From IMG/VR virus record IMGVR_UViG_3300005613_000002, positions 257,625 through 321,624 of that record: a DNA stretch of 64,000 bases. One strand, written 5' to 3'. The position numbers and the translations under genes were made by a program. The notes under the pieces are model-generated. The model was not told where the DNA came from and searched no databases. It saw only the letters and a list, made by a program, of their open reading frames with translations. This document shows positions 35,684 through 55,128 of the stretch, piece by piece (position 1 is the stretch's first letter; every line of letters starts with the position of its first letter).

Positions 35684-35697
35684 ATATGATTTTTTTA

Positions 35698-35728
35698 CAA
35701 ATATATTAAATTTGAAACAATATATCAA
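35698..35728 (-). promoter_or_regulatory. Bacteroidota primary-sigma promoter (TTG-N20-TATATTTG)
   Basis: Consensus match 14 nt upstream of ATG 35683. Confidence 0.65.
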
Positions 35729-41563: not shown

Positions 41564-42310
41564 TTAAAAATCAACTGCGAAGACTATTGTTCTTGAAATT
41601 GATGAATCTTTATCTATTGGATTATTTAGTTTACCAATTGCAACTAAATTTTTATTTTCATCATAAATACCGATTTCACTTATAACTACTTTATCACCAT
41701 CCCAAGTCTCATTAGTGGATGAATTAAATTCATTTAATGGTAGTACTACTGATATATTTGTCGTATATGCAATTGCTTTAATTTCAGTAGATACATTTCC
41801 TAAGAAAAATTCTTCATCACCAAAAGCCATTTCATCTTCATCATTAAATGTTGGATAATCAATATAATCATGTAAGACATACGTAGTAAATGAATCGTAA
41901 TTCAATAATGGGATTTTAAATGTTTGTTGTGTTAATTCAGCAGCAGTTAATGCATTACCTTCAAATGGTTCACCAGAACCATGACCATGTATTTGTGTAG
42001 TTAAATCGTATTCTTTCCATAAAGCAGGGTCAGATTTAACTTCATCTAATGTTGTAAAACCAGAATTATTAACAATTTGTACTAAAGCATAAATATTATG
42101 TATTGTATATCCACCAGTATTATTGTTAATGTCATCATTTAAAAATTTAAAATCATTAATATCATCAAAAGCTATTGATACCTCTTGTAAGTACGGGTCA
42201 CCAGTTTCTAAATATAATGATTTAATATAATTGCAATGTATTGACTTACTTTGCCCATTATTTGGGACTAATATGTATGTTGTATATACTGTATAACCGC
42301 TTGCTGCCAT
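41564..42310 (-). CDS. virion structural protein (tail-collar/baseplate-type C-terminal motif)
   Basis: C-terminal ISEIGIYDENKNLVAIGKL resembles DUF3751-type collar motif; AGTATTTAT at 42326-42334. Confidence 0.55.
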   Translation of the reverse strand: MAASGYTVYTTYILVPNNGQSKSIHCNYIKSLYLETGDPYLQEVSIAFDDINDFKFLNDDINNNTGGYTIHNIYALVQIVNNSGFTTLDEVKSDPALWKEYDLTTQIHGHGSGEPFEGNALTAAELTQQTFKIPLLNYDSFTTYVLHDYIDYPTFNDEDEMAFGDEEFFLGNVSTEIKAIAYTTNISVVLPLNEFNSSTNETWDGDKVVISEIGIYDENKNLVAIGKLNNPIDKDSSISRTIVFAVDF

Positions 42311-42350: not shown

Positions 42351-43151
42351 TTAATTATGCACAAATAGTATCTTTTTTATCTTCACAATTTTTTCATCAG
42401 GGAAATTTTTTATGAACTTCTTAACATATTTTGAATCAGCACTATATGATTTAGTTAAATCAATTTGTTGTGATAAATCCCTTCTTGTTGCAAATGCTCC
42501 CATATCTATATAACCATCATTAATGCGAGTATTAAAATGTTTATAGTTATATCCATTATGAATCATATCCCAATATATTAGACCAACTTTTTCATTACTA
42601 ATTATTTGATTTAACTCACTAATAAATGTTGGGACATAATAATTATCATCACCTGTTAAAATTATATAATCACTACTACTTGCTTGTTTTCCAATATTTC
42701 TTGGTGTATGACCCCAATCATTATATCTTTTTCCTAAAAACATATAATGAATATTTTTCGAATCAAATTTAGAAACAATATCTTTAACTCTATTATTTTC
42801 CACATCATCTACAACAATTGTTGCTTTCCAATTATCATCAATTTGTGCTACTAATGATGATAATATTACATATAATTGTTTTACCCTATTATAGGTTGGA
42901 ATAATAAATTCAATAGTCGATGGTTTGGTTGTGACAGTATTAGAATCAAACACTAAACCTCTTTCCTTAACAACAATATGTTTCGTAACATTATCTTCAA
43001 TATAATCAACAATTAAAACCTTGCGAATATTTTTATTAGTATCACCAAATGTATCGTTGTTTGCATGAATTTTTTTATTAGAATTAACTAAAGTTTGTAA
43101 TTTTTTACTCACATCAACACCACCATATTTTGCTTTAATAATTTTAATCAT
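42351..43151 (-). CDS. GT2 glycosyltransferase with N-terminal SUEL/Gal-lectin-like domain
   Basis: N-term IKAKYG...ANNDTFGD...KVLIVDY; then IIPTYNR, VVDD, RNIG, TGDDNYY. Confidence 0.85.
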   Translation of the reverse strand: MIKIIKAKYGGVDVSKKLQTLVNSNKKIHANNDTFGDTNKNIRKVLIVDYIEDNVTKHIVVKERGLVFDSNTVTTKPSTIEFIIPTYNRVKQLYVILSSLVAQIDDNWKATIVVDDVENNRVKDIVSKFDSKNIHYMFLGKRYNDWGHTPRNIGKQASSSDYIILTGDDNYYVPTFISELNQIISNEKVGLIYWDMIHNGYNYKHFNTRINDGYIDMGAFATRRDLSQQIDLTKSYSADSKYVKKFIKNFPDEKIVKIKKILFVHN

Positions 43152-43160
43152 TCTTAAATA

Positions 43161-44033
43161 TTATTTAAACAAATACATATAATCAGCATGATTTCCCCAA
43201 TATGAATGATTTTTATAAGTATTGGTTTGTTTATATATTGAATTATGTGATGTAAAATGGACACCATGATTAATATGAATTGCTTCATTTTTACAATTCC
43301 ATTGATTTCTTTTTAATGTTTGAGTTTCAATCATACCACTATTTGTTCTTAATGCATTAGGCAATATACGTTCACAATGTTTAATCGCATCATTAAACCT
43401 CATAGTCATTTGATGAAACGGTTCATCATTTTGTCCTCTACGTTGCCATCCATTAGTGTTTATACCACCATAATTCATGTTAGTTAATACTTGACCATCT
43501 TCAAACTCTGGATAATCAAAATAACCTTCTGGATACATTACATCATGTTCTAAAAAAGAAACATATTCATAATTATTCATTTCTTCTGCATTATATAAAC
43601 ATTGCATAATCTGAAGCAACTGATTTAAATGAGATTGTGATGTATACCAACTCTTAATTTCATGGAAAGGATTATTAGGAATATGATTCCAAACACATGA
43701 TATAATATCTACTTTTTGTTCACTGGCTTTTTTTATTGTATCTAATGATTTATCAATTGCTGTATAAATTTTTGGTTTATTATTATTCGAATAAAATATA
43801 CCCAAACGGTTAGTGTTTAATTTTGGAATAGTTAATAAACTACCTTCTCTAACTTTTTCATTAAATTCAACACCATTAATTTCACCACTTATTTCAAGAA
43901 ATTTAACTTGATTAACTTTAGGGTCGCCAATAATTCTATTATCTGCACGTATTACTAATCTATTATTTATTATTCTTGACCGTATGGCAGATAAACAATC
44001 CTTATTACCGTATGTTGCTTTTGTTATTTTCAT
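43161..44033 (-). CDS. GT-A glycosyltransferase with N-terminal SUEL/Gal-lectin-like domain
   Basis: N-term ITKATYG...ADNRIIGDP...KFLEI; YVSFLEHDVMYP (DxD-like), HINHG. Confidence 0.7.
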   Translation of the reverse strand: MKITKATYGNKDCLSAIRSRIINNRLVIRADNRIIGDPKVNQVKFLEISGEINGVEFNEKVREGSLLTIPKLNTNRLGIFYSNNNKPKIYTAIDKSLDTIKKASEQKVDIISCVWNHIPNNPFHEIKSWYTSQSHLNQLLQIMQCLYNAEEMNNYEYVSFLEHDVMYPEGYFDYPEFEDGQVLTNMNYGGINTNGWQRRGQNDEPFHQMTMRFNDAIKHCERILPNALRTNSGMIETQTLKRNQWNCKNEAIHINHGVHFTSHNSIYKQTNTYKNHSYWGNHADYMYLFK

Positions 44034-44042
44034 ATTTTAAAA

Positions 44043-45014
44043 TTATAAAAGTACTGATTTTTTCCCAACTTTTTGAACATATTGATAATAATGCCAACTT
44101 GCTGTATTGGGTTTAATTTTCAAATTTTCATTATATGGCAATTTGTTCATATATGCAGATTTATAAAATAAACCACTTTTTGCATTAACAACACCAGCAT
44201 TATGGAATATGTTATATTTATACCATAAATTTTCACCTGATGAACCCCAACTAAATTGTAAATCATCATGACATACAGTTTCTTTACCCATTTTCCAAGC
44301 ATTCCACAAAACTGCCCACATATCTGAACACCAAATTTGTATAGTGTGATATGGTGGTTTTTTTTCTTCAGGATGTGCTTTCCTATATTCTTCGTCAGCA
44401 GCTACTTTTATTTTATTTAATTGTGTTATTTCTTTAAATAATTTTTCACTATCTTTTTCAACAGTATCCCAGAATTTCCAATCAATATCTTTTAAAATAT
44501 ATTGAGCACCAATAGCATTTAGTTCATTATCTTTAACTACTTGTTTATCAATATCAATAATTTCACACATTTTATCTAAAACATCAACACCTTTACCTAA
44601 AATATAGTCATGCGCAATATACCAACGAGTATCAGAACCATACCATTTATCATCATTTAAAAACTGTTCCCAATTAATTTTATTTTTAAATATTATATCA
44701 TTATCATGATAAAAAATTGCATCATTTTTTAATTCGGGTCTAGCTAACCAGTGTTGTTTTAATATATTTGGTCTGATAGATGAAGTATAATGTTTAGTTT
44801 CTCTAGTATCATTATAGAAAAACCAACGAACATATTTATAATGATTAGCGAGTTTTCGCCATTCTGGTGGAGTAACACCATCTTTAATTTGACATACAAT
44901 ATCAATATTATTTGGAAATATTCCCATTTCCAAAAAATTATTAATCATTACTTCAACCTGCCATGTATAATATGGTGTAGCAGGTTGAGCACAAACAAAT
45001 CTTAAATTTCTCAT
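44043..45014 (-). CDS. peptidyl O-glycosyltransferase-like protein (plant HPAT GT95 / SGT1 GT96-like)
   Basis: Collinear motifs YYTWQVEVM, Y...RP...Q, IFYHDNDIIF, IG, WCSDMWA, IFHNAG, FYKSAY. Confidence 0.68.
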   Translation of the reverse strand: MRNLRFVCAQPATPYYTWQVEVMINNFLEMGIFPNNIDIVCQIKDGVTPPEWRKLANHYKYVRWFFYNDTRETKHYTSSIRPNILKQHWLARPELKNDAIFYHDNDIIFKNKINWEQFLNDDKWYGSDTRWYIAHDYILGKGVDVLDKMCEIIDIDKQVVKDNELNAIGAQYILKDIDWKFWDTVEKDSEKLFKEITQLNKIKVAADEEYRKAHPEEKKPPYHTIQIWCSDMWAVLWNAWKMGKETVCHDDLQFSWGSSGENLWYKYNIFHNAGVVNAKSGLFYKSAYMNKLPYNENLKIKPNTASWHYYQYVQKVGKKSVLL

Positions 45015-45064: not shown

Positions 45065-46771
45065 TTAATTCACAAAAACAGTACCTGTTGAATGTACTTC
45101 ACCATCTATTTCTAATACCCATAAACGTGTAGTTGATATTATTACACCATTAACTTTTCCATCCCAAGGATTTTCAACATAATCATTTGTTCTTTGATAT
45201 AATAAACTACCATCTCTAGTAAATATTGACATTCTATGAACTGGATAACAATCTAAATTCCAAACCTCAAAATAATCATGAATTCCATCATTTAATGTTG
45301 GTGAAAAACCTTCAGGTACAAATATAACACAATCGGATGGTTCAGGAGGTCCTTCAGTAGTTGTTGGTGTAACACAATAACTCACATTAAATGTAATTGT
45401 TGCTGTATTACTCCAATTTGGATTATTATCTGTTCTAACTTGAAATTCAACAGTATCCACATATGAACCCGTCATTAATCCAGATGTTCTATAAAAAATA
45501 CGACTATCAAATTCAAATGGATATGGTATTATTTCATTTTCAACAATTGGCACTATCGCACCTTTGCTAAATTCACCATATTGTGGTAAAGTAGTTATTT
45601 TTATTGCATTAATTGAGTCACCATCATAATCGCTATATGGAAACCAACTAAGGTCTGGATATGATGATACTGATGATGAACATACCGTAATCCATCTAGT
45701 AATAGTAACTGTGTTATCATATGCAACTGGTGGTTGATTAACCCCACAATCAATAATATCATTGCAACAGGTAGTACAAATATCATCAATCCATTCTACA
45801 TCAAAAAATTCAAAACCTGAAGTCCCATATTTGTATGATGGTTCAATCGTACTACAAATTTTTATTCTAATACCATCAACATATCCACCATCATCTTCAA
45901 ATTCTACCCAACTTAATGAATTAGAACCACCACCAACTAAATAATACGTAATATATAATTCATCAAACGCTTCGTCTTCTAAATCATCATATGGAATATC
46001 TAATGTGTAACAATTAGCTAAATATATTGGTGGTTCAGTTGTTGTTGGTTCTATTGTTGTAGTTGTTGTAGGTTCTAATGTAGTTGGCTCAACAGTTGTT
46101 GTTGGCTCTGCTGTAGTTGTTGGTTCAACCGTTGTAGTTGATGAACAAATAACCTCAATCATTTTAGCAACAATATTTGTTGGATTATTAACATCTCTTA
46201 CAACTGCCCAATAAATACCATCTGATATAGCTAAATATGAATATGGATTAAGACCAACATCAAATGATGTTGTGTTTAATGCTTGAGATTCTGTTAAGCT
46301 TAAATAACTTCCAACTTCATAAACACCAGAACCACCATAATAATTTTCTAATATTACCTCAGATAAAAATGGTGTACATTCAAATCTTATATCATAGTCT
46401 ATTGGTGTTTGTGGTTCTACTGTCGTTGTTGGCTCAATTGTAGTTGTAGTTGGTGGTGTTACATTTGGGTCACACTCAATTGGGTCATATTCAATATTAT
46501 CATTAACTTGACTTTCATCAATTGAAATTTCTTCTATTTCATTAACATATAATATAAAAATACTCACTAAATTATTATATGTTGTAGCTGACATATATGA
46601 TAATTCATTATCATTAGGAATTGTATACTGAACACCATGATACGTAAAATATCCGTTAGCAATATCAGTTGCTGTTGGATATGTTTTAGGATATCCATCA
46701 TCAATAATTCCATCAGTTCTTTTTGTTACTGAAACATATAATGACCTTTTATATCCTGAATATTCTGACAT
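45065..46771 (-). CDS. virion fibre-like protein: shared N-terminal anchor, Thr-rich linkers, Ig/cadherin-like domain, T9SS type-B CTD
   Basis: MSEYSGYKRSL anchor; TTTVEP repeats; NQPPVAYD...ATITFNV; VPEGFSP..NDGIHDYF...IFTRDG...WDG. Confidence 0.7.
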   Translation of the reverse strand: MSEYSGYKRSLYVSVTKRTDGIIDDGYPKTYPTATDIANGYFTYHGVQYTIPNDNELSYMSATTYNNLVSIFILYVNEIEEISIDESQVNDNIEYDPIECDPNVTPPTTTTIEPTTTVEPQTPIDYDIRFECTPFLSEVILENYYGGSGVYEVGSYLSLTESQALNTTSFDVGLNPYSYLAISDGIYWAVVRDVNNPTNIVAKMIEVICSSTTTVEPTTTAEPTTTVEPTTLEPTTTTTIEPTTTEPPIYLANCYTLDIPYDDLEDEAFDELYITYYLVGGGSNSLSWVEFEDDGGYVDGIRIKICSTIEPSYKYGTSGFEFFDVEWIDDICTTCCNDIIDCGVNQPPVAYDNTVTITRWITVCSSSVSSYPDLSWFPYSDYDGDSINAIKITTLPQYGEFSKGAIVPIVENEIIPYPFEFDSRIFYRTSGLMTGSYVDTVEFQVRTDNNPNWSNTATITFNVSYCVTPTTTEGPPEPSDCVIFVPEGFSPTLNDGIHDYFEVWNLDCYPVHRMSIFTRDGSLLYQRTNDYVENPWDGKVNGVIISTTRLWVLEIDGEVHSTGTVFVN

Positions 46772-46786
46772 CTAATTCTTTTTATT

Positions 46787-46795
46787 TTAAATACT
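46787..46795 (-). promoter_or_regulatory. late promoter variant AGTATTTAA
   Basis: Within a ~30-nt leader identical to that at 51156-51185. Confidence 0.55.
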
Positions 46796-46817
46796 TTATT
46801 TATTATTATTAAAACAA

Positions 46818-48863
46818 TTATCCACAATTTACATATGATTCATTATTATCATAAGCACAATAACCCTCAGTTGTTAGGTTCTTCCACGCAGTATTATCAG
46901 TTACTTTTGTAATTGAATCACTATTAGCATACTGAGTTTCTGCTAAATTTTCAGACATCCAAACTTGTGTACCAATTTTAACTGTTGGATATACCCTACC
47001 ATTATTTCCAGTCATTGTACCAGTATCTGTTGAATCGTCTTTAATTAACCTTAATGACAGACCATACGCATATAACCATAATGATATATTTGATGTTCCA
47101 CTAAAATTTACTAATTGTAATGCTCTCGTGAACATTCCAAATTCAGTAGTTGATGAACCAAATATTCCAAACTCATTAAATTTTGTGAAATTTCCATTTA
47201 CTGTTTCTCTATGACCACCACCAAATGCTGTGAATCCATATTCATCAGTAGCACCAGCATTAGGTGTTAACCAATGAGTTAAACCAACTTCTTTAAGTTT
47301 ACCACCAGCAACGGTACTACCACTAGCATATGTTTCTAATGTTTGAAATTCTGCTTGTGTAGGTACATGCCATCCAGAAGGTGCGATATTTCTTACATCA
47401 TTAATTGCATATTGATTATATAAATAACCATAACATTTTACACTACTTGGCTCAACAGTTGTAGTTGGTTCTAATGTTGTAGTTGGTTCTAATGTTGTAG
47501 TTGGTTCTAATGTTGTAGTTGGTTCTAATGTCGTGGTAGGCTCAACCGTAGTAGTTGGCTCTAATGTAGTTGTTGTAATTCCAGTTTCACCACAACCAAC
47601 ATTATTATAATCATTATTAAACGCACACATAGCACCAGTCGTTAAACCTGACCAAGTTTCATCATTTTCAATAATTGATATTAAATCATTATTAGCATAC
47701 TGAGTTTCCGCTAAATTTTCAGATAAATATTCTTGTGTCCCAATACAAATTGTACCATAAACTTTCCCATCATTACCAGTATATGTGCTAGTTTCACCAC
47801 TACTTAATGTTGTTGAATCTTTAATTAATCTTATACCTAAACCATGATTTCTATCTACTCCAGCATACACATTTGATTGAGTATTAGATGCATAAGAAGT
47901 AATTGTCCAATTTTGTAATGGATATCCACTTCTAACAGTTGATGTCCATAATGACCCATTTTCAAGTAAATTCACAAAATCACCAGTTGAACCATCACGT
48001 CTACCACTACCAACTAATGTCATTCCATATTCATCAGTAGCACCAGCATTAGGTGTTAACCAATGGTCTAAACCAACTTCTTTAAGTTTACCACCAGCAA
48101 CACTACCACCACCAGCAAGTGCAACTAACACTAAATATTCAGCTTGTGTAGGTACATGCCATCCAGTATTAGCTAAATCTCTACTATCATTAATGGTATG
48201 ACCATTATACAAATAACCATATTCAACACAACCAACAAATGGTTCAACTGTTGTTGTAGGTTCTAATGTAGTTGGCTCAACCGTTGTAGTTGGTTCTAAT
48301 GTAGTTGGTTCAACCGTTGTAGTTGGCTCAACCGTTGTAGTTGGTTCAACCGTTGTAGTTGGTTCTAATGTAGTACTAGGTTCAACCGTAGTGGTTGGCT
48401 CTAATGTAGTACTAGGTTCAACCGTTGTAGTTGGCTCTAATGTAGTACTAGGTTCTACTGTTGTAGTTGGCTCTAATGTAGTAGTTACTGTGCCTGATTT
48501 TTCAATAACACAATTAAATAAATCCCATTCAGATTCAACACTAAATGTTGGTACAACACCCGAACAATTTTCAGGGTCATATTCAACATTATCATTACTG
48601 AATTCAGTACCAAATGATATATCTTCATAACTATTCACATAAGAAATAAAAACATCAACAAGATTATTATATTCGGTTTCTGACATATTTGCAAGTGTAT
48701 CATCATCAGGTATTGAATATTGGATACCATTAACAATAAAGTATCCATTATACACATCAGTTGGTAGTGGGTATATTTTAGGATACCCAACAGCAATATC
48801 ATCTCCAATCATTTTAGTGATTGAAACTTTTAGCGACCTTTTATATTCTGTGTATTGACTCAT
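46818..48863 (-). CDS. virion fibre-like protein with two circularly permuted FISUMP (Fib_succ_major) domains and Thr-rich linkers
   Basis: YGYLYN...GWHVPT...GGKLKE...RLIKD followed by GNDGKVY.T..IGTQ...ENL. Confidence 0.75.
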   Translation of the reverse strand: MSQYTEYKRSLKVSITKMIGDDIAVGYPKIYPLPTDVYNGYFIVNGIQYSIPDDDTLANMSETEYNNLVDVFISYVNSYEDISFGTEFSNDNVEYDPENCSGVVPTFSVESEWDLFNCVIEKSGTVTTTLEPTTTVEPSTTLEPTTTVEPSTTLEPTTTVEPSTTLEPTTTVEPTTTVEPTTTVEPTTLEPTTTVEPTTLEPTTTVEPFVGCVEYGYLYNGHTINDSRDLANTGWHVPTQAEYLVLVALAGGGSVAGGKLKEVGLDHWLTPNAGATDEYGMTLVGSGRRDGSTGDFVNLLENGSLWTSTVRSGYPLQNWTITSYASNTQSNVYAGVDRNHGLGIRLIKDSTTLSSGETSTYTGNDGKVYGTICIGTQEYLSENLAETQYANNDLISIIENDETWSGLTTGAMCAFNNDYNNVGCGETGITTTTLEPTTTVEPTTTLEPTTTLEPTTTLEPTTTLEPTTTVEPSSVKCYGYLYNQYAINDVRNIAPSGWHVPTQAEFQTLETYASGSTVAGGKLKEVGLTHWLTPNAGATDEYGFTAFGGGHRETVNGNFTKFNEFGIFGSSTTEFGMFTRALQLVNFSGTSNISLWLYAYGLSLRLIKDDSTDTGTMTGNNGRVYPTVKIGTQVWMSENLAETQYANSDSITKVTDNTAWKNLTTEGYCAYDNNESYVNCG
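47450..47578 (-). repeat. 18-bp coding tandem repeat (TTTLEP units)
   Basis: GTAGTTGGTTCTAATGTT repeated in tandem from 47461. Confidence 0.9.
48241..48487 (-). repeat. 15/18-bp coding tandem repeat (TTT[VL]EP/STTLEP)
   Basis: In-frame repeat tract within the 46818-48863 ORF. Confidence 0.9.
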
Positions 48864-48884
48864 TTATTTTATATCTTATTAATT

Positions 48885-51155
48885 TTATGCATTATTTTCA
48901 ACATCATCATAAGCACATAAAGCACTTGTTGTTAATGCATCCCAAGTACTATCACCTATTGGTGTATAAACACCACCATCATAACCATCTATCCATGAGT
49001 TATTTCTCCATTGAGTTTCTTTTAAATTATCAGCAAGCCATTCTTGTGTTCCAATACAAATAGTTCTATATAATTTACCATCATTTCCTTGATAAGTACC
49101 TGATTCACCATGTGATAATGTCGTAGAATCTTTAACTAATCTTATACAATTACCTATTTTTTTAAATTGTGTTATAAATGATGAAACACCTAACCATACT
49201 CTAAAAACTATGGTATTATGGTATAATTCGCCAAAAAATGCTTGTGTTGTATCATATGGGTTTTCTGTTGTTGTCCATAAATTTGAAAATTCATACTTCC
49301 CATTATATGCACCACCACTAAATCTTTGTCCACTACCCCTTGCATTAAAACCATAAGTGTTTGTAGCACCAATATTTGGGTTTTCCCAATGTGTTAACCC
49401 TGTTTCTTTTAAATGTCCACTTGCATCATTAACATCTCTAGTACCATCAGGGTCAATATATAACAATAATGTACCTAATTCATCATTAGTTGGGACATGC
49501 CATCCAGTATTTGCTATATTTCTAGCATCATCAACTGTTAACCAATTATATAGAAAACCTAAATTAACTGTTTCAATTGGTTGGACTGTTGTTGTACCAG
49601 TAATTGGCTCTAATGTAGTTGTTGTACCAGTAATTGGCTCAATCGTTGTGGTAGTTGGCTCTAATGTAGTTGTTGGCTCAATCGTTGTGGTAGTGACACC
49701 ACTATCAATAATACAAACATAATCTAACCAACTACCAAAATATGTTGTTTCACCAGTAAAACATGGCTCAACTGTGGCTTTAACACAGGTGAATGGTTCA
49801 TCACATGTGTTTAATGCATAATCAATTGGACAAACATATCCATGATATCCATTAGTTGCTGAATATTCATAATGTAATGCTGTACCAACTAAATCAATAG
49901 AATCAAATATTTTCTTATCGCCTAAATCTTCATCACTAGTTGCATTTATTAAATCATATGGAGTTGCATCATATATATGAATACCAACACCAGCAACATT
50001 AGTTTCATTATGACCAATAACTTCAATAAAATTTTCACCTGCTGGTAATTCAATTGGATAAATAAACCAATATCTAAAAGGTATTCTTCCAGTATCTCCA
50101 CCACCAGTTGGGTCACCATTTGCTGCAAACATAGTTGCTAGTGCTGAAATATCTTGTTCAAGAATTAAACTACCATTTAGTTTGACTTTACCTAAATTAT
50201 CACAACCAAAACCTACATAATATGTTTTAGGTACTGCAATATTAAAACAAAAAGAAAAACCAATATCTTGATTATCACGAGTCACATTACCCCAAACACA
50301 TGAACGATTTAAAGGTCCTTCTAATGAAGGATATGGTGTATTTATCCAATATTGATTACTTGTTGGTATCCTCTCATAATCACCAGTACCATCATAATTC
50401 CAATCATCGAAAATTACTGCGCCATAGAGACCATAAGAAGAATGTTCTGCTTTTCTAACTACAGTATATGTTGAAGAATAATATGTTGGGTCAATTGTCT
50501 CATAAAGCACACAATCATCACCAATTGGTGTATAACCTTCTTCACATGTTTCACACCATGATAAATTTTCAAATCTACTACAATCAGGAATACCTAAATC
50601 AGTAAATACAATTTGATATTCATCACCTATTGGTACATCAGTAAAATAATTAGTTATAGGTGTTGTGTGTTCAAGATTAGTCCCAATAACACCACCAGAA
50701 CTACCAATTAATTCAACCATAATTGAACCAGTTCCACTTGTTAGCGTGTATGAAACAGTAACAGTACTCCCACTAAATTCATGCGGTAATATCGTATAAT
50801 TAATATTACATACTGGTGCTAATGTTGTGCTTGTAGTTGTTGGTGTTTCACCACTACAATTTATTGGGTCATATTCTACATTTACATTAATTTCATCATC
50901 AATAAATGACACATTTTCAATATCTTCAACATATGATTCAAATGCTGACACTAATTCATTATAATCAGTATCTGACATATATGATAATTCATTATCATCA
51001 GGAATTGGATATTCTTCATAATTATATATGAAATACCCACGAGCAATATCAGTTGCAGTTGGGTATGTTTTAGGATATCCAACTATAACCTCACCACCTA
51101 TAGCTTTCGTAACCGAAACATATAACGACCTTTTATATCCTGAATATTCTGACAT
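48885..51155 (-). CDS. virion fibre-like protein: shared anchor, Cys-flanked beta-sandwich (PA14-like) domain, permuted FISUMP domain
   Basis: MSEYSGYKRSL anchor; VGFGCDNLGKVKLNG; LGFLYN...RLVKD...GNDGKLYRTICIGTQEW. Confidence 0.72.
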   Translation of the reverse strand: MSEYSGYKRSLYVSVTKAIGGEVIVGYPKTYPTATDIARGYFIYNYEEYPIPDDNELSYMSDTDYNELVSAFESYVEDIENVSFIDDEINVNVEYDPINCSGETPTTTSTTLAPVCNINYTILPHEFSGSTVTVSYTLTSGTGSIMVELIGSSGGVIGTNLEHTTPITNYFTDVPIGDEYQIVFTDLGIPDCSRFENLSWCETCEEGYTPIGDDCVLYETIDPTYYSSTYTVVRKAEHSSYGLYGAVIFDDWNYDGTGDYERIPTSNQYWINTPYPSLEGPLNRSCVWGNVTRDNQDIGFSFCFNIAVPKTYYVGFGCDNLGKVKLNGSLILEQDISALATMFAANGDPTGGGDTGRIPFRYWFIYPIELPAGENFIEVIGHNETNVAGVGIHIYDATPYDLINATSDEDLGDKKIFDSIDLVGTALHYEYSATNGYHGYVCPIDYALNTCDEPFTCVKATVEPCFTGETTYFGSWLDYVCIIDSGVTTTTIEPTTTLEPTTTTIEPITGTTTTLEPITGTTTVQPIETVNLGFLYNWLTVDDARNIANTGWHVPTNDELGTLLLYIDPDGTRDVNDASGHLKETGLTHWENPNIGATNTYGFNARGSGQRFSGGAYNGKYEFSNLWTTTENPYDTTQAFFGELYHNTIVFRVWLGVSSFITQFKKIGNCIRLVKDSTTLSHGESGTYQGNDGKLYRTICIGTQEWLADNLKETQWRNNSWIDGYDGGVYTPIGDSTWDALTTSALCAYDDVENNA

Positions 51156-51170
51156 CTAATTCTTTTTATT

Positions 51171-51179
51171 TTAAATACT
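51171..51179 (-). promoter_or_regulatory. late promoter variant AGTATTTAA
   Basis: Duplicated leader, see 46787. Confidence 0.55.
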
Positions 51180-51189
51180 TTATTATTTA

Positions 51190-54100
51190 TTATATTTCTA
51201 ATGTTGTTGTAGGTTCTAATGTTGTCGTAGGCTCAACAGTGGTTGTTGGCTCTACTGTTGTTGTTACCGCATCAACAATTATACAATTATATAAATCCCA
51301 TTCAATTTGCGCTTCTGTTGGAAGTGTTGTTGTAGGTTCTACTGTTGTAGTAGTTCCAGTAATTGGTTCTAATGTCGTTGTTGTCGTAGGTTCAACTGTT
51401 GTAGTTGGAACAGGACAATCCATTTTAAAATACCAACCAACACCAGTTAAATATAATTCAACCATTGCTATAGTTGTTGATGTTGATTTATAAAATTCAT
51501 TAATACCAGAACTATCTGTAATTACCACAGGATAACCATCTGGTTCTAATTCTGGGTCACCAATATTCGGATAAATGAATGTTGATGTTGGGTCTAATTT
51601 ACCTGTTAATGCATTAGTAAATATATTTCTTGCTGATTCACCATAACCATACGCTGCATCACCAACAAAACCACTATCAATTTCGGTATTATTATCATAT
51701 TTCACAATAAATCTATCAGGATAACCACTCACATCATAATTAAAGACAATATTTCCAGTATCTGAACCTAAATCAATTTCATAAATATTTTTATATCCAA
51801 CTTCACCACCATCATATTCTACTAAATCACCACATAATGCATCATATATTGGTTGAACTGTAGTTGTTGGTTCAACCGTTGTGGTAGGTTCTAATGTAGT
51901 ACTAGTAATAGCACTAACAACAATACAACTATAATCAATCCATTCATAAGTCACAGTATCACCAATTGTGGTTGTAGTTGGCTCTAATGTTGTTGGCTCA
52001 ATTGTAGTTGTAGGTTCAACTGTTGTAGTTGGCTCACAAGGAATTAAATCTGCTTTAACACAGGTAAATGGTTCGTCACATGTATTTAACGAATATCCAC
52101 TTGGACAAACATATCCATGATATCCAAAATCATCAGAATTCTCATAATGTATAGGTGTTGTTGGGTTAGTAACTAATTGGTCTGATGTAAATAATATTTT
52201 TTCACCCAAATCTTCATCACTAGTTGCATTTTCTAAATCATAAGGTGTTGCATCATATATCTGAATACCAACTGCTGCAACACTATATTCGTTATGACCA
52301 TAAATTTCGATCACATTCTTACCAGCAGGTAGATGCATTGGATAAATAAACCAATATCTATAAGGTATTCTATCAGGGAAACCACCACCAGTTGGGTCAC
52401 CATTTGCCGTAAACATAGCAGTTAATGATGGAATATCTTGCTCAAGAACCATCTCACCATTAAGTTTTATTTTTCCCCAATTATCACAACCAAAACCTAC
52501 ATAATATGTTTTGGCAACAGCAATATCAATACAATATGAAAAACCAATATCTTGTTTATTTCGTGTTACATTACCCCAAATAGATGTACGATTTAAAGGT
52601 CCTTGGTCACTATATGGGTTTACCCAATATGGATTACTTAAATCAAATCTACTATAATTTCCAGTACCATCATAATTCCAACTATCAAATAATACAGCAC
52701 CATAAACACCATATGATGTATCATCAGTTTTTTTAACAACATAATATGATGAAGCATAATATGTTGGGTCAATTACATCATAAAGAACACATTCATCATC
52801 ACCAACTGGGTCATATCCTTCTTCACATGTTTTACACCATGATATAATCTCAAGAGCATTACAACTTGGGTCATTTAATTCTGTGAAAGACATCAAATAA
52901 TCATCATTAAATGGTACATTAAGAAATGAATAAACACCAGTACTATATGCTATGTTAGAATAATAACTAGTACCAGTTTCACCAGATAGTTGAACAACCA
53001 TTGGGAATGTACCACTAGTTATTTCATAAAATATATTAACACTATTTCCACTAAACTCATATGGTAATATTGAATAATTTATATTACATACTGGTTCAAT
53101 AGTCGTTGTTGTATCAACAACAATACAACTATAATCAATCCATTCATAGGTTACACTATCACCAACCGTTGTAGTAGGTGCTACCGTAGTTGTAGGTTCA
53201 ACTGTTGTAGTTGGCTCAATTGTAGTTGTTGGCTCTAATGTAGTACTAGTAATAGCACTAACAACAATACAACTATAATCAATCCATTCATAGGTTACAC
53301 TATCACCAACTGTAGTCGTTGGCTCAACTGTTGTAGTTGGCTCTAATGTAGTACTAGGTTCAACCGTTGTAGTTGGTTCTACTGTAGTCGTTGGCTCAAC
53401 TGTTGTAGTTGGCTCTAATGTAGTACTAGGTTCAACCGTTGTAGTTGGTTCAATCGTAGTACTAGGTTCAACCGTTGTAGTTGGTTCTACTGTAGTCGTT
53501 GGCTCTAATGTCGTTGGTTCAATCGTAGTACTAGGTTCAACCGTTGTCGTTGGTTCTACCGTAGTACTAGGTTCAACCGTTGTAGTAGTAGGTTCTACCG
53601 TAGTACTAGGTTCAACCGTTGTAGTAGTAGGTTCTACCGTAGTACTAGGTTCTAATGTCGTAGTAGTAGGTTCTACCGTAGTAGTAGGTTCTAATGTCGT
53701 AGTAGTAGGTTCTACCGTAGTAGTAGGTTCTAATGTCGTTGTTGTACTAGTAGTTGTTGGCTCTAGTGTAGTTGTTGTACTAGTAGTTGTTGGCTCTAGT
53801 GTAGTTGTTGTGGTTGTATCTCCCGGACATGGAGGACAGCATGGACATGGAATTAAACTACCAAACATAGTCATTTCATAATCAGGAATAGTCCAAGACC
53901 TATTTGACTTATATGACATAGCAAACAATAATTCTTGGTCTTCGATAATAAACATTTTTAGTGTATTAAACACTTTTCCAACAATGTTACCATCTAAATC
54001 AGCTAAATCATAATATCTAACATCTAATGATTTTACTGTGCCTGTTAATATTTTACTACTTCCTGTTGGTATTAAAGTAATACCTAATGTTCTAGTGCTT

Positions 54101-55128
54101 GATTTATGCCACATAATTGTTGGCATTTCAAGTTTAGGTGTTTTTAAATAAAATTCCTCACCATAAACATTTTTATCCGAATCATTACTATAATGAATTA
54201 CACCTAATTTTTTATAAACAGGTGCTTGATTTTGAATATATGAAACAAAACCACCATATGTTCTAGTTTCAAAATTACCATATTTTATATCAGTAGCTTG
54301 AACACCTGCAACTTCTTCTGTATATATCACAGATAAATCCCAAAATGGAAATATTGTATTATTGGTATTATAATTAGCAAAATAACTAATAATACTATCA
54401 GCACTATAATCACCAGTAAAACTATAATTTGATGATACACCGCTATAATATATTAGTGCACCAGCAATTGCAGTTGGTGTGTATAATGAAAAATCTGGCA
54501 ATTCTCTATCAACATTAACAACAATATTATCATTCAATAAATTACCAGTTTTACTAATAATTTTATATGTTAAATATGGTGTAGGTAAATCCCTATTAAT
54601 TGTATGTCCAGTAGTATTAGTATCATGAGCATATTTAATAAACAACAAATCCCCAACTAAAGGTTCTTCAGTATTTGAACCATATGTTGGTGCTTTTCTT
54701 AAAGATATTGAATTCCCACCTGTAACACCACTCATATACACCATTAAATCAGGCTGTCTAGTGTGTAATTCATCAGTAATAAATGTTGTTCCACTATCAC
54801 TAAAAAAACCTAAAGAATGTGCATCATTAACTATATCATATGGTTCAGATATTGGTTTAATTTCATTATATTCATCACCTTCATATGTTTTTGGAATAAA
54901 TGAAATTATTTTAGGGTTTTTATCTCTAGGTCTTAAAATACTAATGTCTGAAGAATTGAAATCTGGTTCAACACTAGTATTAATTTCATTAATAAAGTTA
55001 TAATCAATCTCACTATCGCCAACAGCAAAGTATTTAAACGTTAAATCACCCTTAGATAGTTGTTCTCTACCTTTGGATGTCAACATTATATTTAATACTA
55101 CAGGGTCTGTCTTTTCAATGAGTGCCAT
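51190..55128 (-). CDS. large baseplate/fibre-associated protein with long mucin-like Thr-rich region
   Basis: N-term LNIMLTSKGREQLSKG...YFAVGDSEIDY (collar-like); about 170 aa TT[VLI]EP tract; PA14-like and PDRFIV modules; AGTATTTAT at 55143-55151. Confidence 0.7.
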   Translation of the reverse strand: MALIEKTDPVVLNIMLTSKGREQLSKGDLTFKYFAVGDSEIDYNFINEINTSVEPDFNSSDISILRPRDKNPKIISFIPKTYEGDEYNEIKPISEPYDIVNDAHSLGFFSDSGTTFITDELHTRQPDLMVYMSGVTGGNSISLRKAPTYGSNTEEPLVGDLLFIKYAHDTNTTGHTINRDLPTPYLTYKIISKTGNLLNDNIVVNVDRELPDFSLYTPTAIAGALIYYSGVSSNYSFTGDYSADSIISYFANYNTNNTIFPFWDLSVIYTEEVAGVQATDIKYGNFETRTYGGFVSYIQNQAPVYKKLGVIHYSNDSDKNVYGEEFYLKTPKLEMPTIMWHKSSTRTLGITLIPTGSSKILTGTVKSLDVRYYDLADLDGNIVGKVFNTLKMFIIEDQELLFAMSYKSNRSWTIPDYEMTMFGSLIPCPCCPPCPGDTTTTTTLEPTTTSTTTTLEPTTTSTTTTLEPTTTVEPTTTTLEPTTTVEPTTTTLEPSTTVEPTTTTVEPSTTVEPTTTTVEPSTTVEPTTTVEPSTTIEPTTLEPTTTVEPTTTVEPSTTIEPTTTVEPSTTLEPTTTVEPTTTVEPTTTVEPSTTLEPTTTVEPTTTVGDSVTYEWIDYSCIVVSAITSTTLEPTTTIEPTTTVEPTTTVAPTTTVGDSVTYEWIDYSCIVVDTTTTIEPVCNINYSILPYEFSGNSVNIFYEITSGTFPMVVQLSGETGTSYYSNIAYSTGVYSFLNVPFNDDYLMSFTELNDPSCNALEIISWCKTCEEGYDPVGDDECVLYDVIDPTYYASSYYVVKKTDDTSYGVYGAVLFDSWNYDGTGNYSRFDLSNPYWVNPYSDQGPLNRTSIWGNVTRNKQDIGFSYCIDIAVAKTYYVGFGCDNWGKIKLNGEMVLEQDIPSLTAMFTANGDPTGGGFPDRIPYRYWFIYPMHLPAGKNVIEIYGHNEYSVAAVGIQIYDATPYDLENATSDEDLGEKILFTSDQLVTNPTTPIHYENSDDFGYHGYVCPSGYSLNTCDEPFTCVKADLIPCEPTTTVEPTTTIEPTTLEPTTTTIGDTVTYEWIDYSCIVVSAITSTTLEPTTTVEPTTTVQPIYDALCGDLVEYDGGEVGYKNIYEIDLGSDTGNIVFNYDVSGYPDRFIVKYDNNTEIDSGFVGDAAYGYGESARNIFTNALTGKLDPTSTFIYPNIGDPELEPDGYPVVITDSSGINEFYKSTSTTIAMVELYLTGVGWYFKMDCPVPTTTVEPTTTTTLEPITGTTTTVEPTTTLPTEAQIEWDLYNCIIVDAVTTTVEPTTTVEPTTTLEPTTTLEI
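53310..53817 (-). repeat. longest coding Thr-rich tandem tract
   Basis: Continuous (T/S)TT[VLI]EP units, 15-21 bp period. Confidence 0.92.

What the first reader, a model, noticed from the sequence alone, without database searches (positions are those of the whole stretch)
42351..44033. Two tandem lectin-glycosyltransferase fusions (Cys-free SUEL-like domain + GT-A)
Both ORFs begin with a ~70 aa module (IxxAxYG...I.A.N..FGD/IGDP...K.L.[VI]) matching the SUEL/rhamnose-binding (Gal_lectin) signature without its cysteines, followed by different GT-A catalytic domains (classic GT2 IIPTYNR/GDD, and EHD type). A lectin joined to a GT parallels eukaryotic polypeptide GalNAc-transferases, whose lectin domain docks on already glycosylated mucin to densify glycosylation. 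Inference: these are elongating enzymes that recognise the first sugar.
Basis: partly seen in the sequence, partly recalled or inferred. Interest (0 to 1): 0.7.

Follow-up and report, generated by a model that had tools for sequence, protein, structure and literature searches.

The report
Phage glycosyltransferases with lectin-like heads
Two neighbouring genes of an uncultured 322-kb aquatic phage each join a small, disulfide-free domain resembling rhamnose/galactose-binding lectins to a sugar-transferring enzyme, in a cassette next to threonine-rich fibre genes, so the phage may sugar-coat its own fibres.

Summary
ORF1 (42351-43151, minus) and ORF2 (43161-44033, minus) begin with homologous ~70-aa modules; cross-family HMMs find each other at E 4.5e-9 and 6e-14, with no third copy in the genome. 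ORF1 continues as a Pfam GT2 domain. ORF2 continues as a GT-A fold with an invariant E-H-D motif.

The module is a trimmed, cysteine-poor relative of SUEL/rhamnose-binding lectins. Its profile hits SUL-I and CSL3 in the PDB, and the five best structural matches among 48,161 chains are all SUEL domains. Five of six CSL3 sugar-site positions match the module consensus; four of them hold in this window's two ORFs. No module sequence matches Pfam's SUEL model. The whole 67 residues fit the DnaJC11 C-terminal domain (PF11875) better.

- A third GT-A gene without the module (44043-45014) accompanies ORF2 in 77 of 80 related viral loci.
- Other glycosyltransferase genes and a weakly methyltransferase-like gene are inserted between them in some relatives.
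- A poly-threonine protein gene lies directly upstream in 37 of 60 informative loci.

The "lectin docks on a primed glycan" mechanism is plausible but untested. Most GT2 homologues lack the module, so it is an accessory part.

The parts
42942..43151 (-). ORF1 residues 1-70: SUEL/DnaJC11_C-like module (strand 2-9, helix 15-23, short helix 32-35, strands 45-52, 55-62 and 66-68). Key residues are Y9, N32, G36, D37, K44, L46 and E63. It has no cysteine.
   Evidence: The AlphaFold2 model has mean pLDDT 86.6. VIA-align's top 5 of 48,161 chains are all SUEL lectin domains. DNAJC11 C-terminal domains match at TM 0.70-0.74.
42354..42914 (-). ORF1 residues 80-266: compact GT2-family GT-A catalytic domain, with IIPTYNR at 83-89 and the DxD-type motif T-G-D-D-N at 166-170.
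   Evidence: PF00535 scores 45.1 bits against a cut-off of 23.3. Weak NCBIfam matches are to polysaccharide and protein-glycan GT2 enzymes. Invariant columns are listed.
43818..44033 (-). ORF2 residues 1-72: the same module (strands 2-8 and 25-29, helix 14-18, strands 45-52, 55-62 and 66-69). Key residues are Y8, N32, G36, D37, K44, L46 and E63. It has one cysteine (C13).
   Evidence: The full-length model has pLDDT 87.9 and pTM 0.85, with pLDDT 90-96 over the module. Conservation is shown.
43164..43817 (-). ORF2 residues 73-290: divergent GT-A-fold glycosyltransferase domain with no Pfam family. The invariant E162-H163-D164 sits after the strand at 157-162, in the DxD position.
   Evidence: Foldseek against the PDB finds BoGT6a (4cj8, E 1.9e-7), SpsA, GTA/GTB and B4GALNT1, all at probability 1.00. 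ESM Atlas structural neighbours are GT2 clusters at TM 0.66-0.84.
44043..45014 (-). Third glycosyltransferase-like gene (323 aa, phrog_4417, no module), directly upstream of ORF2. It is the constant partner of ORF2 in related phages.
   Evidence: Atlas structure matches to HPAT clusters (TM by query 0.71-0.74), a Glyco_transf_7C cluster (0.92) and a GT8 cluster (0.60). It is 63% identical to the gene upstream of the ORF2 homologue in L003. It is present beside ORF2 in 77 of 80 IMG/VR loci.
45065..55128 (-). Four consecutive genes (45065-46771, 46818-48863, 48885-51155, 51190-55128) for fibre-like proteins with TTT(V/L)EPTTT poly-Thr linkers. These are the candidate acceptors. Three of them share a ~100-aa N-terminal domain, and their distal domains are Fib_succ_major or CHU_C.
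   Evidence: Translations are, Pfam matches and the N-terminal alignment. The poly-Thr scan of the whole genome found 7 of 201 ORFs of at least 150 aa, all in the block adjoining the cassette.
61110..63098 (-). A further poly-Thr-bearing protein (662 aa) in the same structural block.

Best explanation
The finding is the downstream two-thirds of a three-gene, cytoplasmic glycan-building cassette of an uncultured 322-kb phage. The phage probably infects Bacteroidota.

Shown:
- GT3 (44043-45014), ORF2 and ORF1 are all GT-A-type glycosyltransferases. None has an evident signal peptide or membrane segment: ORF1 and ORF2 begin directly with the module, and no predictor was run.
- ORF2 and ORF1 each carry an N-terminal ~70-aa module of the disulfide-poor DnaJC11_C/DUF3395 kind.
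- That module shares its fold core with SUEL/rhamnose-binding lectins. It also keeps their Tyr/Asn/Asp/Lys sugar-site residues.

Inferred:
- The cassette decorates the phage's own poly-threonine linkers in fibre-like virion proteins, which are encoded immediately upstream. It would use host nucleotide sugars.
- The module-less GT3 is the likeliest initiating enzyme.
- The modules of ORF2 and ORF1 bind a sugar already attached (or a neighbouring glycan). This would hold the enzyme on the repetitive acceptor so that glycosylation is extended or made denser.
- This would be functionally analogous to the lectin domain of ppGalNAc-transferases, but built from an unrelated fold.
For: Domains:
- ORF1 is Pfam GT2. 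ORF2 is a GT-A fold. GT3 is HPAT/GT8/GT7C-like by predicted structure.

Module:
- The two copies are homologous.
- The profile hits PDB rhamnose-binding lectins at E 2.9e-20 and 9.4e-11.
- All five best matches among 48,161 chains are SUEL domains (Z 4.1-5.0, rmsd 2.1-4.0 A over 54-58 residues, 26-28% identity).
- The CSL3 ligand residues Tyr27, Asn74, Asp79 and Lys86 (PMC3269628) align with the invariant or near-invariant Y8, N32, D37 and K44.
- Of the 112 best profile hits scanned, 103 carry PF11875 and 51 carry PF02140. Some are fused to GH106 alpha-L-rhamnosidase, GH2 or CBM domains.
- A Formosa agariphila protein annotated as a putative beta-glucuronidase shares the fold.

Cassette:
- GT3 and ORF2 occur together in 77 of 80 IMG/VR loci.
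- Extra GT2 genes and a ~170-aa gene are inserted between them in relatives. That gene has the VLDLGCG motif and only a sub-threshold Pfam methyltransferase match.

Acceptor:
- All 7 poly-Thr ORFs of the genome lie in the block next to the cassette.
- A poly-Thr ORF lies directly upstream in 37 of 60 informative loci, and within 5 kb downstream in 0 of 52.
- The window's poly-Thr proteins show no direct similarity to those of the 80 loci.
- All 5 tested 58-70-kb genomes lacking an adjacent poly-Thr gene have runs of six or more ACN triplets elsewhere.

Precedent: phage-encoded glycosylation of mycobacteriophage capsid and tail-tube proteins (Freeman 2023), as cited in PMC12619734.
Against: - No biochemical data exist. 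The acceptor, the donor sugar and the lectin activity are all inferred.
- Foldseek found no PDB match for the module. The VIA Z-scores (about 5 or less) are low in absolute terms.
- Pfam's SUEL model does not match.
- CSL3's Glu7 has no aligned equivalent.
- The Gly83 position is Asn in both window proteins (in CSL3 it contacts the sugar through its main chain).
- Most homologues of ORF1's catalytic domain lack the module. On the quick tree, the module's distribution needs at least 2-3 gains or losses. It is therefore not needed for catalysis.
- In 23 of 60 informative loci no poly-Thr gene is adjacent.
- The loci are related by descent, so the adjacency counts are not independent.
- The ACN runs were not checked for reading frame, and no cassette-free control genomes were scanned.
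- SUEL-type domains also mediate protein contacts (latrophilin-teneurin structures).
Confidence: 0.5

Rival explanations
1. The cassette glycosylates something, but the N-terminal module is not a lectin. It would instead be a protein-binding, acceptor-peptide-binding or oligomerisation domain. For example, it could dock on the Thr-rich linker itself, on GT3 or on an assembly chaperone.
For: - The best full-length structural matches are DNAJC11 C-terminal domains, for which no sugar binding is known.
- The latrophilin Lec domain, a SUEL-type domain among the top matches, is seen in complex with the protein teneurin (6ska, 6vhh).
- CSL3's Glu7 is not aligned.
- Pfam's SUEL model does not match.
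Against: - The residues that contact sugar in CSL3 (Tyr, Asn, Asp, Lys) are exactly the invariant or near-invariant positions across 80 diverse module sequences.
- Relatives of the module are fused to rhamnosidase, GH2 and CBM domains in bacteria.
Confidence: 0.25
2. The three enzymes remodel host envelope glycans (LPS, capsule or another surface polysaccharide) during infection, for example to block superinfection. The module would then recognise the host glycan being extended.
For: - ORF1's weak NCBIfam matches are to exopolysaccharide, teichuronic-acid and lipid-linked oligosaccharide GT2 enzymes.
- Viral GT-A neighbours of ORF2 in the Atlas include a WavE LPS-synthesis family.
- In L007/L008 the GT3-ORF2 pair lies among small early-type genes, near a GT1/GT9 gene, and not beside structural genes.
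Against: - The NCBIfam matches are far below their cut-offs.
- The proteins show no evident membrane segments.
- The cassette is tightly linked to poly-Thr fibre genes in most loci.
- From general knowledge, serotype conversion is typical of temperate phages. No integrase was seen in the parts of the window scanned, and no specific search was made.
Confidence: 0.15
3. The enzymes build a glycan on hypermodified phage DNA bases, and the lectin-like module recognises the first sugar on the DNA.
For: - Virus-encoded glycosyltransferase sets that hypermodify DNA are known (Pyle 2024, as cited in PMC12619734).
- The cassette borders a DNA-metabolism block: RuvC-like, GIY-YIG, SbcCD-like and primase genes.
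- The genome has one thymidylate-synthase-family gene.
Against: - That gene scores above the cut-off of the thymidylate synthase equivalog TIGR03284 and lies next to a dUTPase gene.
- It keeps the Asn of the P-Y-N-M-A-S-Y motif. From my own knowledge of thymidylate synthases, this residue is uracil-specific, which argues against a dCMP hydroxymethylase.
- It lies about 200 kb from the cassette.
- Nothing else points to a hydroxymethyl-pyrimidine pathway.
Confidence: 0.07

Closest known systems
SUEL / L-rhamnose-binding lectin domain (Pfam PF02140; e.g. CSL3 2zx0, SUL-I 5h4s, latrophilin Lec domain)
   Same: - It shares the A-x-Y-G start and the N-x-x-F/I-G-D-P-x-x-G-x-x-K-Y-L-E-V-x-Y core.
- The core superposes at rmsd 2.1-2.2 A over 54 residues with 26% identity.
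- The sugar-site residues Tyr, Asn, Asp and Lys are conserved.
   Different: - It has about 70 residues, not about 95.
- It has 0-1 cysteines in place of eight, so it is compatible with the cytoplasm.
- The N-terminal strand carrying Glu7 and the long disulfide-stapled loop are missing.
- An extra C-terminal beta-hairpin (residues 55-69) carries an invariant Glu63.
- No module sequence matches Pfam's PF02140 model.
DnaJ-like protein C11 C-terminal domain (Pfam PF11875, formerly DUF3395)
   Same: - It is the best whole-module structural match: TM 0.70-0.74 over residues 2-67.
- 11 of 31 module sequences hit the Pfam model, with a best E of 6.8e-5.
- 103 of the 112 best profile hits scanned carry it.
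- It is likewise free of disulfides.
   Different: - The window's ORF2 module does not reach the Pfam model. ORF1's own result was not reported separately.
- In eukaryotes the domain follows a J-domain protein of mitochondria. In bacteria it mostly forms tandem arrays.
- A fusion to glycosyltransferases did not turn up in my two literature searches on lectins and DUF3395, which did not combine these terms with glycosyltransferases.
Polypeptide GalNAc-transferases (CAZy GT27 catalytic domain plus C-terminal ricin-type lectin, CBM13). This comparison rests on established knowledge and was not tested here.
   Same: Both join a GT-A enzyme to a lectin-type domain. Both are proposed to act on Thr-rich, mucin-like acceptors. 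Docking on previously added sugar is the proposed logic in both.
   Different: - The lectin fold here is SUEL/DUF3395-like, not a beta-trefoil.
- The lectin is N-terminal, not C-terminal.
- The catalytic domains are GT2-like, not GT27.
- The enzymes are cytoplasmic phage proteins, not Golgi membrane proteins.
- The resemblance is analogy, not membership.
Serine-rich-repeat adhesin glycosylation loci of Gram-positive bacteria (GtfA/B plus follow-on GT-A enzymes), and phage or giant-virus self-glycosylation (mycobacteriophage capsid and tail, Freeman 2023; chlorovirus capsid). This comparison rests on established knowledge plus the citation.
   Same: - Several soluble glycosyltransferases are encoded beside a gene for a Ser/Thr-rich repetitive protein.
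- They would act sequentially in the cytoplasm before export or assembly.
- Accessory methyltransferases or extra GTs vary between relatives.
   Different: - No GT-B initiating pair (GtfA/B) is in the cassette.
- The acceptors would be poly-Thr linkers between globular domains of fibre-like proteins.
- Lectin-like modules on the transferases are not a feature of those systems.

Membership tests
SUEL_Lectin (PF02140) / rhamnose-binding lectin CRD | Match to the curated Pfam model | tested here: not met
   No PF02140 hit at E up to 10 for any of 31 module sequences, nor for the full ORFs at E up to 1. However, a profile of the module does hit solved RBLs (E 2.9e-20, 9.4e-11, 5.7e-6).
SUEL_Lectin (PF02140) / rhamnose-binding lectin CRD | Eight cysteines forming four conserved disulfides (PMC3269628) | tested here: not met
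   ORF1's module has no Cys and ORF2's module has one (C13). The disulfide pattern is described.
SUEL_Lectin (PF02140) / rhamnose-binding lectin CRD | YGR and DPC-x-G-T-x-KYL motifs | tested here: inconclusive
   A-x-Y-G and G-D-(P/T)-x-x-(G/N)-x-x-K-x-L are present and conserved. The Arg of YGR and the Cys of DPC are absent.
SUEL_Lectin (PF02140) / rhamnose-binding lectin CRD | The alpha/beta SUEL fold | tested here: inconclusive
   The core (model residues 1-54) superposes on CSL3, latrophilin, SUL-I and ADGRL3 lectin domains, which take ranks 1-5 of 48,161 chains (Z 4.1-5.0). Against this, Foldseek found nothing, the absolute Z is low, and residues 55-70 are extra.
SUEL_Lectin (PF02140) / rhamnose-binding lectin CRD | Primary sugar-site residues (CSL3 Glu7, Tyr27, Asn74, Asp79, Gly83 main chain, Lys86) | tested here: inconclusive
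   Tyr, Asn, Asp and Lys align with invariant or near-invariant module positions. The Gly position is Gly in most of the family but Asn in both window ORFs. Glu7 lies outside the aligned region.
SUEL_Lectin (PF02140) / rhamnose-binding lectin CRD | Binding of L-rhamnose or D-galactosides | not testable with these tools
   This needs glycan arrays or calorimetry on the recombinant module.
DnaJ-like_C11_C (PF11875, DUF3395) | Match to the curated Pfam model | tested here: inconclusive
   11 of 31 module sequences match, with a best E of 6.8e-5. The window's ORF2 module gives no hit, and ORF1's own result was not reported separately. 103 of the 112 best profile hits carry the family.
DnaJ-like_C11_C (PF11875, DUF3395) | The same fold over the whole domain | tested here: met
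   The predicted module matches AlphaFold models of DNAJC11 C-termini (human, mouse, Dictyostelium, Arabidopsis, S. pombe) at TM by query 0.70-0.74, over residues 2-67, with probability 0.99-1.00. Both sides of the comparison are predictions.
Glycosyltransferase family 2 (PF00535), for ORF1 | Pfam match above the gathering score, with GT-A nucleotide-binding and DxD motifs | tested here: met
   45.1 bits against a cut-off of 23.3, over residues 82-209. I-I-P-T-x-x-R and T-G-D-D-N-Y-Y are invariant in 16 homologues.
GT-A fold glycosyltransferases, for ORF2 | GT-A Rossmann-like fold with an acidic metal-binding motif after strand 4 | tested here: met
   Foldseek gives probability 1.00 to GT6, GT2, GT12 and chondroitin-synthase structures, with 284 matches at E of 0.001 or below. 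GT2 clusters in the Atlas match at TM 0.66-0.84. E162-H163-D164 is invariant in 25 homologues. No Pfam or NCBIfam family matches.
Polypeptide GalNAc-transferase (GT27 + CBM13) | C-terminal ricin-type beta-trefoil lectin domain | tested here: not met
   The lectin-like module is N-terminal and SUEL/DUF3395-like. No ricin-type Pfam hit was found.
Hydroxyproline O-arabinosyltransferase-like (PF23452 HPAT), for the neighbour GT3 | Pfam match or a close structural match | tested here: inconclusive
   There is no Pfam hit at E up to 1. Atlas structural neighbours include HPAT clusters (TM by query 0.71-0.74), a Glyco_transf_7C cluster (0.92) and a GT8 cluster (0.60).

The most novel reading that the evidence does not exclude
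The DUF3395/DnaJC11 C-terminal domain family is a disulfide-free form of the SUEL lectin that can work in the cytoplasm. A widespread group of uncultured aquatic phages fuses it to glycosyltransferases, and these carry out processive, mucin-type O-glycosylation of poly-threonine linkers in their own fibres. The result would be virions with mucin-like, glycan-coated appendages. This would also suggest a sugar-binding role for the unexplained C-terminal domain of human DNAJC11.
Probability: 0.3. Interest if true: 0.75.

Novelty: new variant of a known kind. Interest (0 to 1): 0.55.

Why it matters
Phage self-glycosylation has been shown experimentally in only a few systems. Here a conserved cassette found in hundreds of metagenomic clusters sits next to mucin-like poly-Thr fibre genes. 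If these fibres are glycosylated, that would affect how aquatic Bacteroidota phages adsorb to hosts, stick to particles or mucus, and resist proteases.

The work also links a domain of unknown function (DUF3395, present in human DNAJC11) to the SUEL lectin fold and its sugar-site residues. That gives a testable function for the domain.

Finally, it offers a small, disulfide-free lectin-plus-GT-A design that could be tested in E. coli. The value is moderate until binding and transfer are actually measured.

Tried and rejected
- GenBank phage collection: blastn of the cassette found nothing and tblastn of ORF2 found nothing. ORF1 gave only two distant, unannotated hits. No cultured relative could be used.
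- Foldseek of the 75-residue module model against the PDB gave no significant match. The exhaustive VIA-align search was needed to see the SUEL domains.
- A word-index search restricted to ORF2 residues 1-72 returned only the query and two near relatives. It gave no new architectures.
- A search of viral contigs with the shared N-terminal domain of the three fibre paralogues found no relative. The reciprocal test (does every such fibre gene come with a cassette?) could not be done.
- ENA and JGI loci could not be extended through the genome search.
- DNA-glycosylation idea: the only thymidylate-synthase-family gene looks like an ordinary uracil-specific enzyme beside a dUTPase gene. This was kept only as a low-probability rival.
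- A search of the phage genome for the NAD-dependent epimerase/dehydratase family (PF01370), used as a marker of nucleotide-sugar synthesis, found none. The donor sugar could not be guessed.
- Complex prediction was not used, because I do not claim that GT3 and ORF2 bind each other. The careful tree search did not finish, so the quick tree was used.
- The 248-aa gene downstream (41564-42310) stayed unassigned.
Full report
**What is there**

The window is the last 64 kb of a 321,624-bp IMG/VR virus record with direct terminal repeats, judged complete by CheckV. G+C is about 27%. On the minus strand, two ORFs separated by 9 nt occupy exactly the stated interval: ORF1 at 42351-43151 (266 aa) and ORF2 at 43161-44033 (290 aa). 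The surroundings are phage-like. They include SbcCD-like nucleases, a primase, a RuvC-like resolvase, a GIY-YIG/T5orf172 protein, a sigma factor, a protease-like protein and very large structural proteins. No cultured phage in GenBank carries an ORF2 homologue.

**The shared N-terminal module is real**

The first ~70 residues of the two ORFs align at 35% identity over 46 residues (BLASTP E 0.002). An HMM built only from ORF2-family N-termini finds ORF1 as the sole other hit among the 1466 stop-to-stop ORFs of the genome (E 4.5e-9). The reciprocal HMM finds ORF2 at E 6.1e-14. A joint profile finds only these two copies in the genome. Across 31 sequences of both families, A6, Y8, N32, G36, K44 and E63 are invariant, and G9, D12, D37 and L46 nearly so. 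The same positions stay conserved when 49 distant module sequences are added.

**What the module is**

- A profile of the module hits solved L-rhamnose-binding lectins: SUL-I 5h4s (E 2.9e-20, all three repeats), CSL3 2zx0 (9.4e-11) and CSL2 (5.7e-6). It hits latrophilin lectin domains only weakly. The matches run through the A-N-N-x-x-F-G-D-P-C-x-G-T-x-K-Y-L-E-V-x-Y core.
- Pfam's own SUEL model matches none of the 31 sequences. Instead, 11 of them reach PF11875, the DnaJ-like C11 C-terminal domain (best E 6.8e-5).
- A profile search of 1.84 billion representative proteins gives 3806 hits at E of 0.001 or below, mostly proteins with 3-16 tandem copies. Of the 112 best hits scanned, 103 carry PF11875 and 51 carry PF02140. 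A few add alpha-L-rhamnosidase GH106, GH2 or CBM domains.
- An AlphaFold2 model of ORF1 residues 1-75, built with 80 aligned sequences, has mean pLDDT 86.6. It shows a strand, a helix, a short helix and three further strands.
- Foldseek finds nothing significant for it in the PDB. An exhaustive VIA-align search of 48,161 chains puts SUEL-type domains at ranks 1-5: CSL3 (Z 5.0, rmsd 2.2 A, 54 residues, 26% identity), latrophilin (Z 4.5), SUL-I, and the ADGRL3 and latrophilin-3 lectin domains. All align to model residues 1-54 or 1-55 except SUL-I (1-74). The rows below them have 18% identity or less.
- Against AlphaFold models of Swiss-Prot proteins, the whole module (residues 2-67) matches the C-terminal domain of DNAJC11 from animals, Dictyostelium, plants and yeast at TM 0.70-0.74. 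It also matches a region of a Formosa agariphila protein annotated as a putative beta-glucuronidase.

I conclude that the module belongs to the disulfide-free DUF3395/DnaJC11_C kind of domain. That domain shares its core and its signature motif with SUEL lectins. It lacks their N-terminal strand and disulfide-stapled loop, and it adds a C-terminal hairpin.

**Sugar-site residues**

According to a review of these lectins (PMC3269628), CSL3 binds rhamnose and galactose through Glu7, Tyr27, Asn74, Asp79, the main chain of Gly83, and Lys86. In the HMMER alignment:

| CSL3 residue | Module position | Status |
|---|---|---|
| Tyr27 | Y8 | invariant |
| Asn74 | N32 | invariant |
| Asp79 | D37 | nearly invariant |
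| Gly83 (main chain) | position 41 | Gly in most members, Asn in both window ORFs |
| Lys86 | K44 | invariant |
| Glu7 | none | outside the aligned core |

The ligand-binding positions are therefore the most conserved positions of the module. By inference only, from the strand register of the models (strands 45-52 and 55-62 with a two-residue turn), the invariant Glu63 should lie across the hairpin from Lys44. It might then replace Glu7. I could not check this without coordinates.

**The catalytic halves**

ORF1 residues 82-209 match Pfam GT2 above the cut-off, with I-I-P-T-Y-N-R and T-G-D-D-N-Y-Y invariant. ORF2 has no Pfam, PHROG or NCBIfam match. Its full-length model (pLDDT 87.9, pTM 0.85) shows a GT-A fold. 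Foldseek gives probability 1.00 to BoGT6a, SpsA, the blood-group transferases GTA/GTB, B4GALNT1 and chondroitin synthase. GT2 clusters are its structural neighbours in the ESM Atlas (TM 0.66-0.84). F-L-E-H-D-V (160-165) is invariant in 25 homologues and follows the strand at 157-162, where GT-A enzymes carry the DxD motif.

**How the module is distributed**

ORF2 homologues are numerous and strongly conserved: 742 at E of 0.001 or below, with the listed 120 at 62-100% identity. Nearly all of the listed ones begin with the module. For ORF1 it is the opposite. Only 12 of the 120 best homologues have the module, and the rest are ~188-aa catalytic domains alone. On a quick maximum-likelihood tree of the catalytic domain, ten module-bearing sequences form one clade nested among module-less ones. 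Two others sit elsewhere, so at least two to three gains or losses are needed (the careful search did not finish). The module is therefore an accessory part that has been attached or lost repeatedly. It is not required for catalysis.

- *A third enzyme.* The gene just upstream (44043-45014, 323 aa, phrog_4417) has no module. Its predicted structure resembles HPAT clusters (TM 0.71-0.74), a Glyco_transf_7C cluster (0.92) and a GT8 cluster (0.60). It is most likely a third GT-A enzyme.
- *A constant pair.* In 80 IMG/VR loci fetched with the ORF2 family, this gene accompanies ORF2 in 77, nearly always directly upstream on the same strand.
- *Variable inserts.* In many loci other genes are inserted between the two. 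These are a 191-aa module-less GT2 like ORF1's catalytic domain, a 218-225-aa protein whose N-terminus has GT2-like motifs but which gave no Pfam match, and a ~170-aa protein with the V-L-D-L-G-C-G methyltransferase motif. The last reaches only a sub-threshold Pfam hit.
- *Same synteny in a close relative.* A close relative of the window phage (L005/L006) has the same order: giant protein, GT3, ORF2, then a module-bearing GT2.

This is the pattern of a modular glycan-assembly cassette.

**Likely acceptor**

The four genes immediately upstream (45065-55128), and one more at 61110-63098, encode fibre-like proteins with TTT(V/L)EPTTT linkers. Three of them share a ~100-aa N-terminal domain and end in Fib_succ_major or CHU_C domains.

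- In the whole genome, 7 of 201 ORFs of at least 150 aa have such poly-Thr stretches. All lie in the one block that adjoins the cassette across the genome ends.
- A poly-Thr ORF lies directly upstream (within 200 nt, same strand) in 37 of 60 loci with enough upstream sequence. None lies within 5 kb downstream in 52 loci. The same holds for L003 and L005.
- With linkers masked, the window's poly-Thr proteins resemble none of those in the 80 loci. The property that travels with the cassette is the linker, not one protein family.
- Five 58-70-kb genomes (four rated 100% complete, one 88%) lack an adjacent poly-Thr gene. All five still contain runs of six or more ACN triplets elsewhere: 13-27 matches against 0-6 for the reversed pattern. 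The reading frame of these runs was not checked.

These counts are not independent, because the loci are related by descent, and no cassette-free control genomes were scanned. The association is suggestive but is not proof.

**Most likely mechanism**

ORF1 and ORF2 begin directly with the module, and none of the three proteins shows an evident signal peptide or membrane segment (by eye; no predictor was run). They are therefore probably cytoplasmic. The phage lacks an epimerase/dehydratase-family gene, so it probably uses host nucleotide sugars.

I think the cassette O-glycosylates the poly-Thr linkers of the phage's fibre-like proteins before assembly. GT3 is the likeliest initiator. ORF2 and ORF1 would be follow-on enzymes whose lectin-like heads hold them on an already glycosylated, repetitive acceptor.

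- The domain assignments are shown (confidence about 0.9).
- The lectin function is inferred from conserved site residues and from the enzymes to which the module's relatives are fused.
- The acceptor is inferred from gene neighbourhood.
- The order of action is a guess.
- Overall confidence in the full story is about 0.5.

**Rivals**

- The module may bind protein and not sugar. DNAJC11 has no known lectin activity, and the latrophilin lectin domain contacts teneurin.
- The enzymes may act on host envelope glycans. ORF1 has weak NCBIfam similarity to polysaccharide GT2s, and in L007/L008 the pair sits among early-type genes.
- The enzymes may act on modified DNA. This is unlikely, because the single thymidylate-synthase-family gene looks like an ordinary uracil-specific enzyme next to a dUTPase gene.

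**Comparison with what is known**

A GT-A enzyme with an appended lectin is the design of animal ppGalNAc-transferases. There, however, the lectin is a C-terminal ricin-type trefoil and the catalytic family is GT27, so the resemblance is analogy and not membership.

Cytoplasmic, sequential glycosylation of Ser/Thr-rich repeats by enzymes encoded beside the substrate gene is known from bacterial serine-rich-repeat adhesins. Phage-encoded glycosylation of virion proteins is known from mycobacteriophages (cited in PMC12619734).

That paper also describes "moraphages": aquatic jumbo phages of up to 307 kb, with predicted Bacteroidota hosts and four putative glycosyltransferase orthogroups among the core groups the authors examined. 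The window phage may be related, but I did not test this.

A SUEL/DUF3395-type module on glycosyltransferases did not turn up in my two searches on lectins and DUF3395. Neither search combined these terms with glycosyltransferases or phages.

I rate the finding a new variant of a known kind, of moderate interest until binding and transfer are measured.

Noticed in passing
window 45065-51155 (minus strand): Three paralogous fibre-like proteins (568, 681 and 756 aa) share a ~100-aa N-terminal domain (57-63% identity). After poly-Thr linkers they diverge into different distal domains: two Fib_succ_major copies, one Fib_succ_major copy, or a CHU_C type-IX-secretion-type C-terminal domain. A CHU_C domain in a phage protein is unusual. 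It points to a Bacteroidota host or to gene exchange with one.
   Followed up: partly
window 51190-55128 (minus strand): A 1312-aa protein has 39 TTT tripeptides (up to 20 Thr in 30 residues) and weak hexapeptide/left-handed beta-helix hits. Its first 427 residues are 61% identical to the start of the 2461-aa giant protein of L005.
   Followed up: partly
loci L017-L039, L051, L052, L073, L074 and others, between the GT3 and ORF2 homologues: A ~170-aa gene with the SAM-methyltransferase motif V-L-D-L-G-C-G is inserted inside the cassette in many related phages. Its only Pfam hit is Methyltransf_25 at E 0.0068, below the cut-off. It could be a sugar O-methyltransferase. Other loci carry a 218-225-aa protein with GT2-like N-terminal motifs but no Pfam match, or a 207-aa unknown, at the same place.
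   Followed up: partly
G000:C1:92550-93674 (locus L009 1480-2604): A thymidylate-synthase-family gene of 374 aa has an insertion of roughly 40 residues splitting the Pfam/NCBIfam match. It lies directly after a dUTPase gene. The catalytic Cys (P-S-C-H) and the uracil-specific Asn (P-Y-N-M-A-S-Y) are kept.
   Followed up: partly
window 36552-37118 (minus strand): The phage encodes a sigma-70/ECF-type sigma factor (Sigma70_r2 at E 2.7e-12, plus region 4) next to the primase gene.
   Followed up: no
window 32315-35728 and 38763-40256 (minus strand): One large protein (1137 aa) combines an N-terminal Metallophos nuclease domain with an SbcC/Rad50-like part that has a zinc-hook match, apparently an SbcD-SbcC fusion. 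A second Metallophos-type DNA-repair exonuclease (497 aa, phrog_704) lies nearby.
   Followed up: no
Swiss-Prot T2KNA8 residues 868-928 (Formosa agariphila): A protein annotated as a putative beta-glucuronidase carries a region with the same fold as the module (TM by query 0.64). From memory, this protein belongs to the ulvan-utilisation locus, and ulvan is rich in rhamnose. If so, it would fit a rhamnose-type specificity for the disulfide-free domain family.
   Followed up: no
whole genome G000 (321,624 bp, direct terminal repeats): Size, aquatic metagenome origin, Bacteroidota-type domains and several glycosyltransferases resemble the recently named 'moraphages' (PMC12619734). Membership was not tested.
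   Followed up: no
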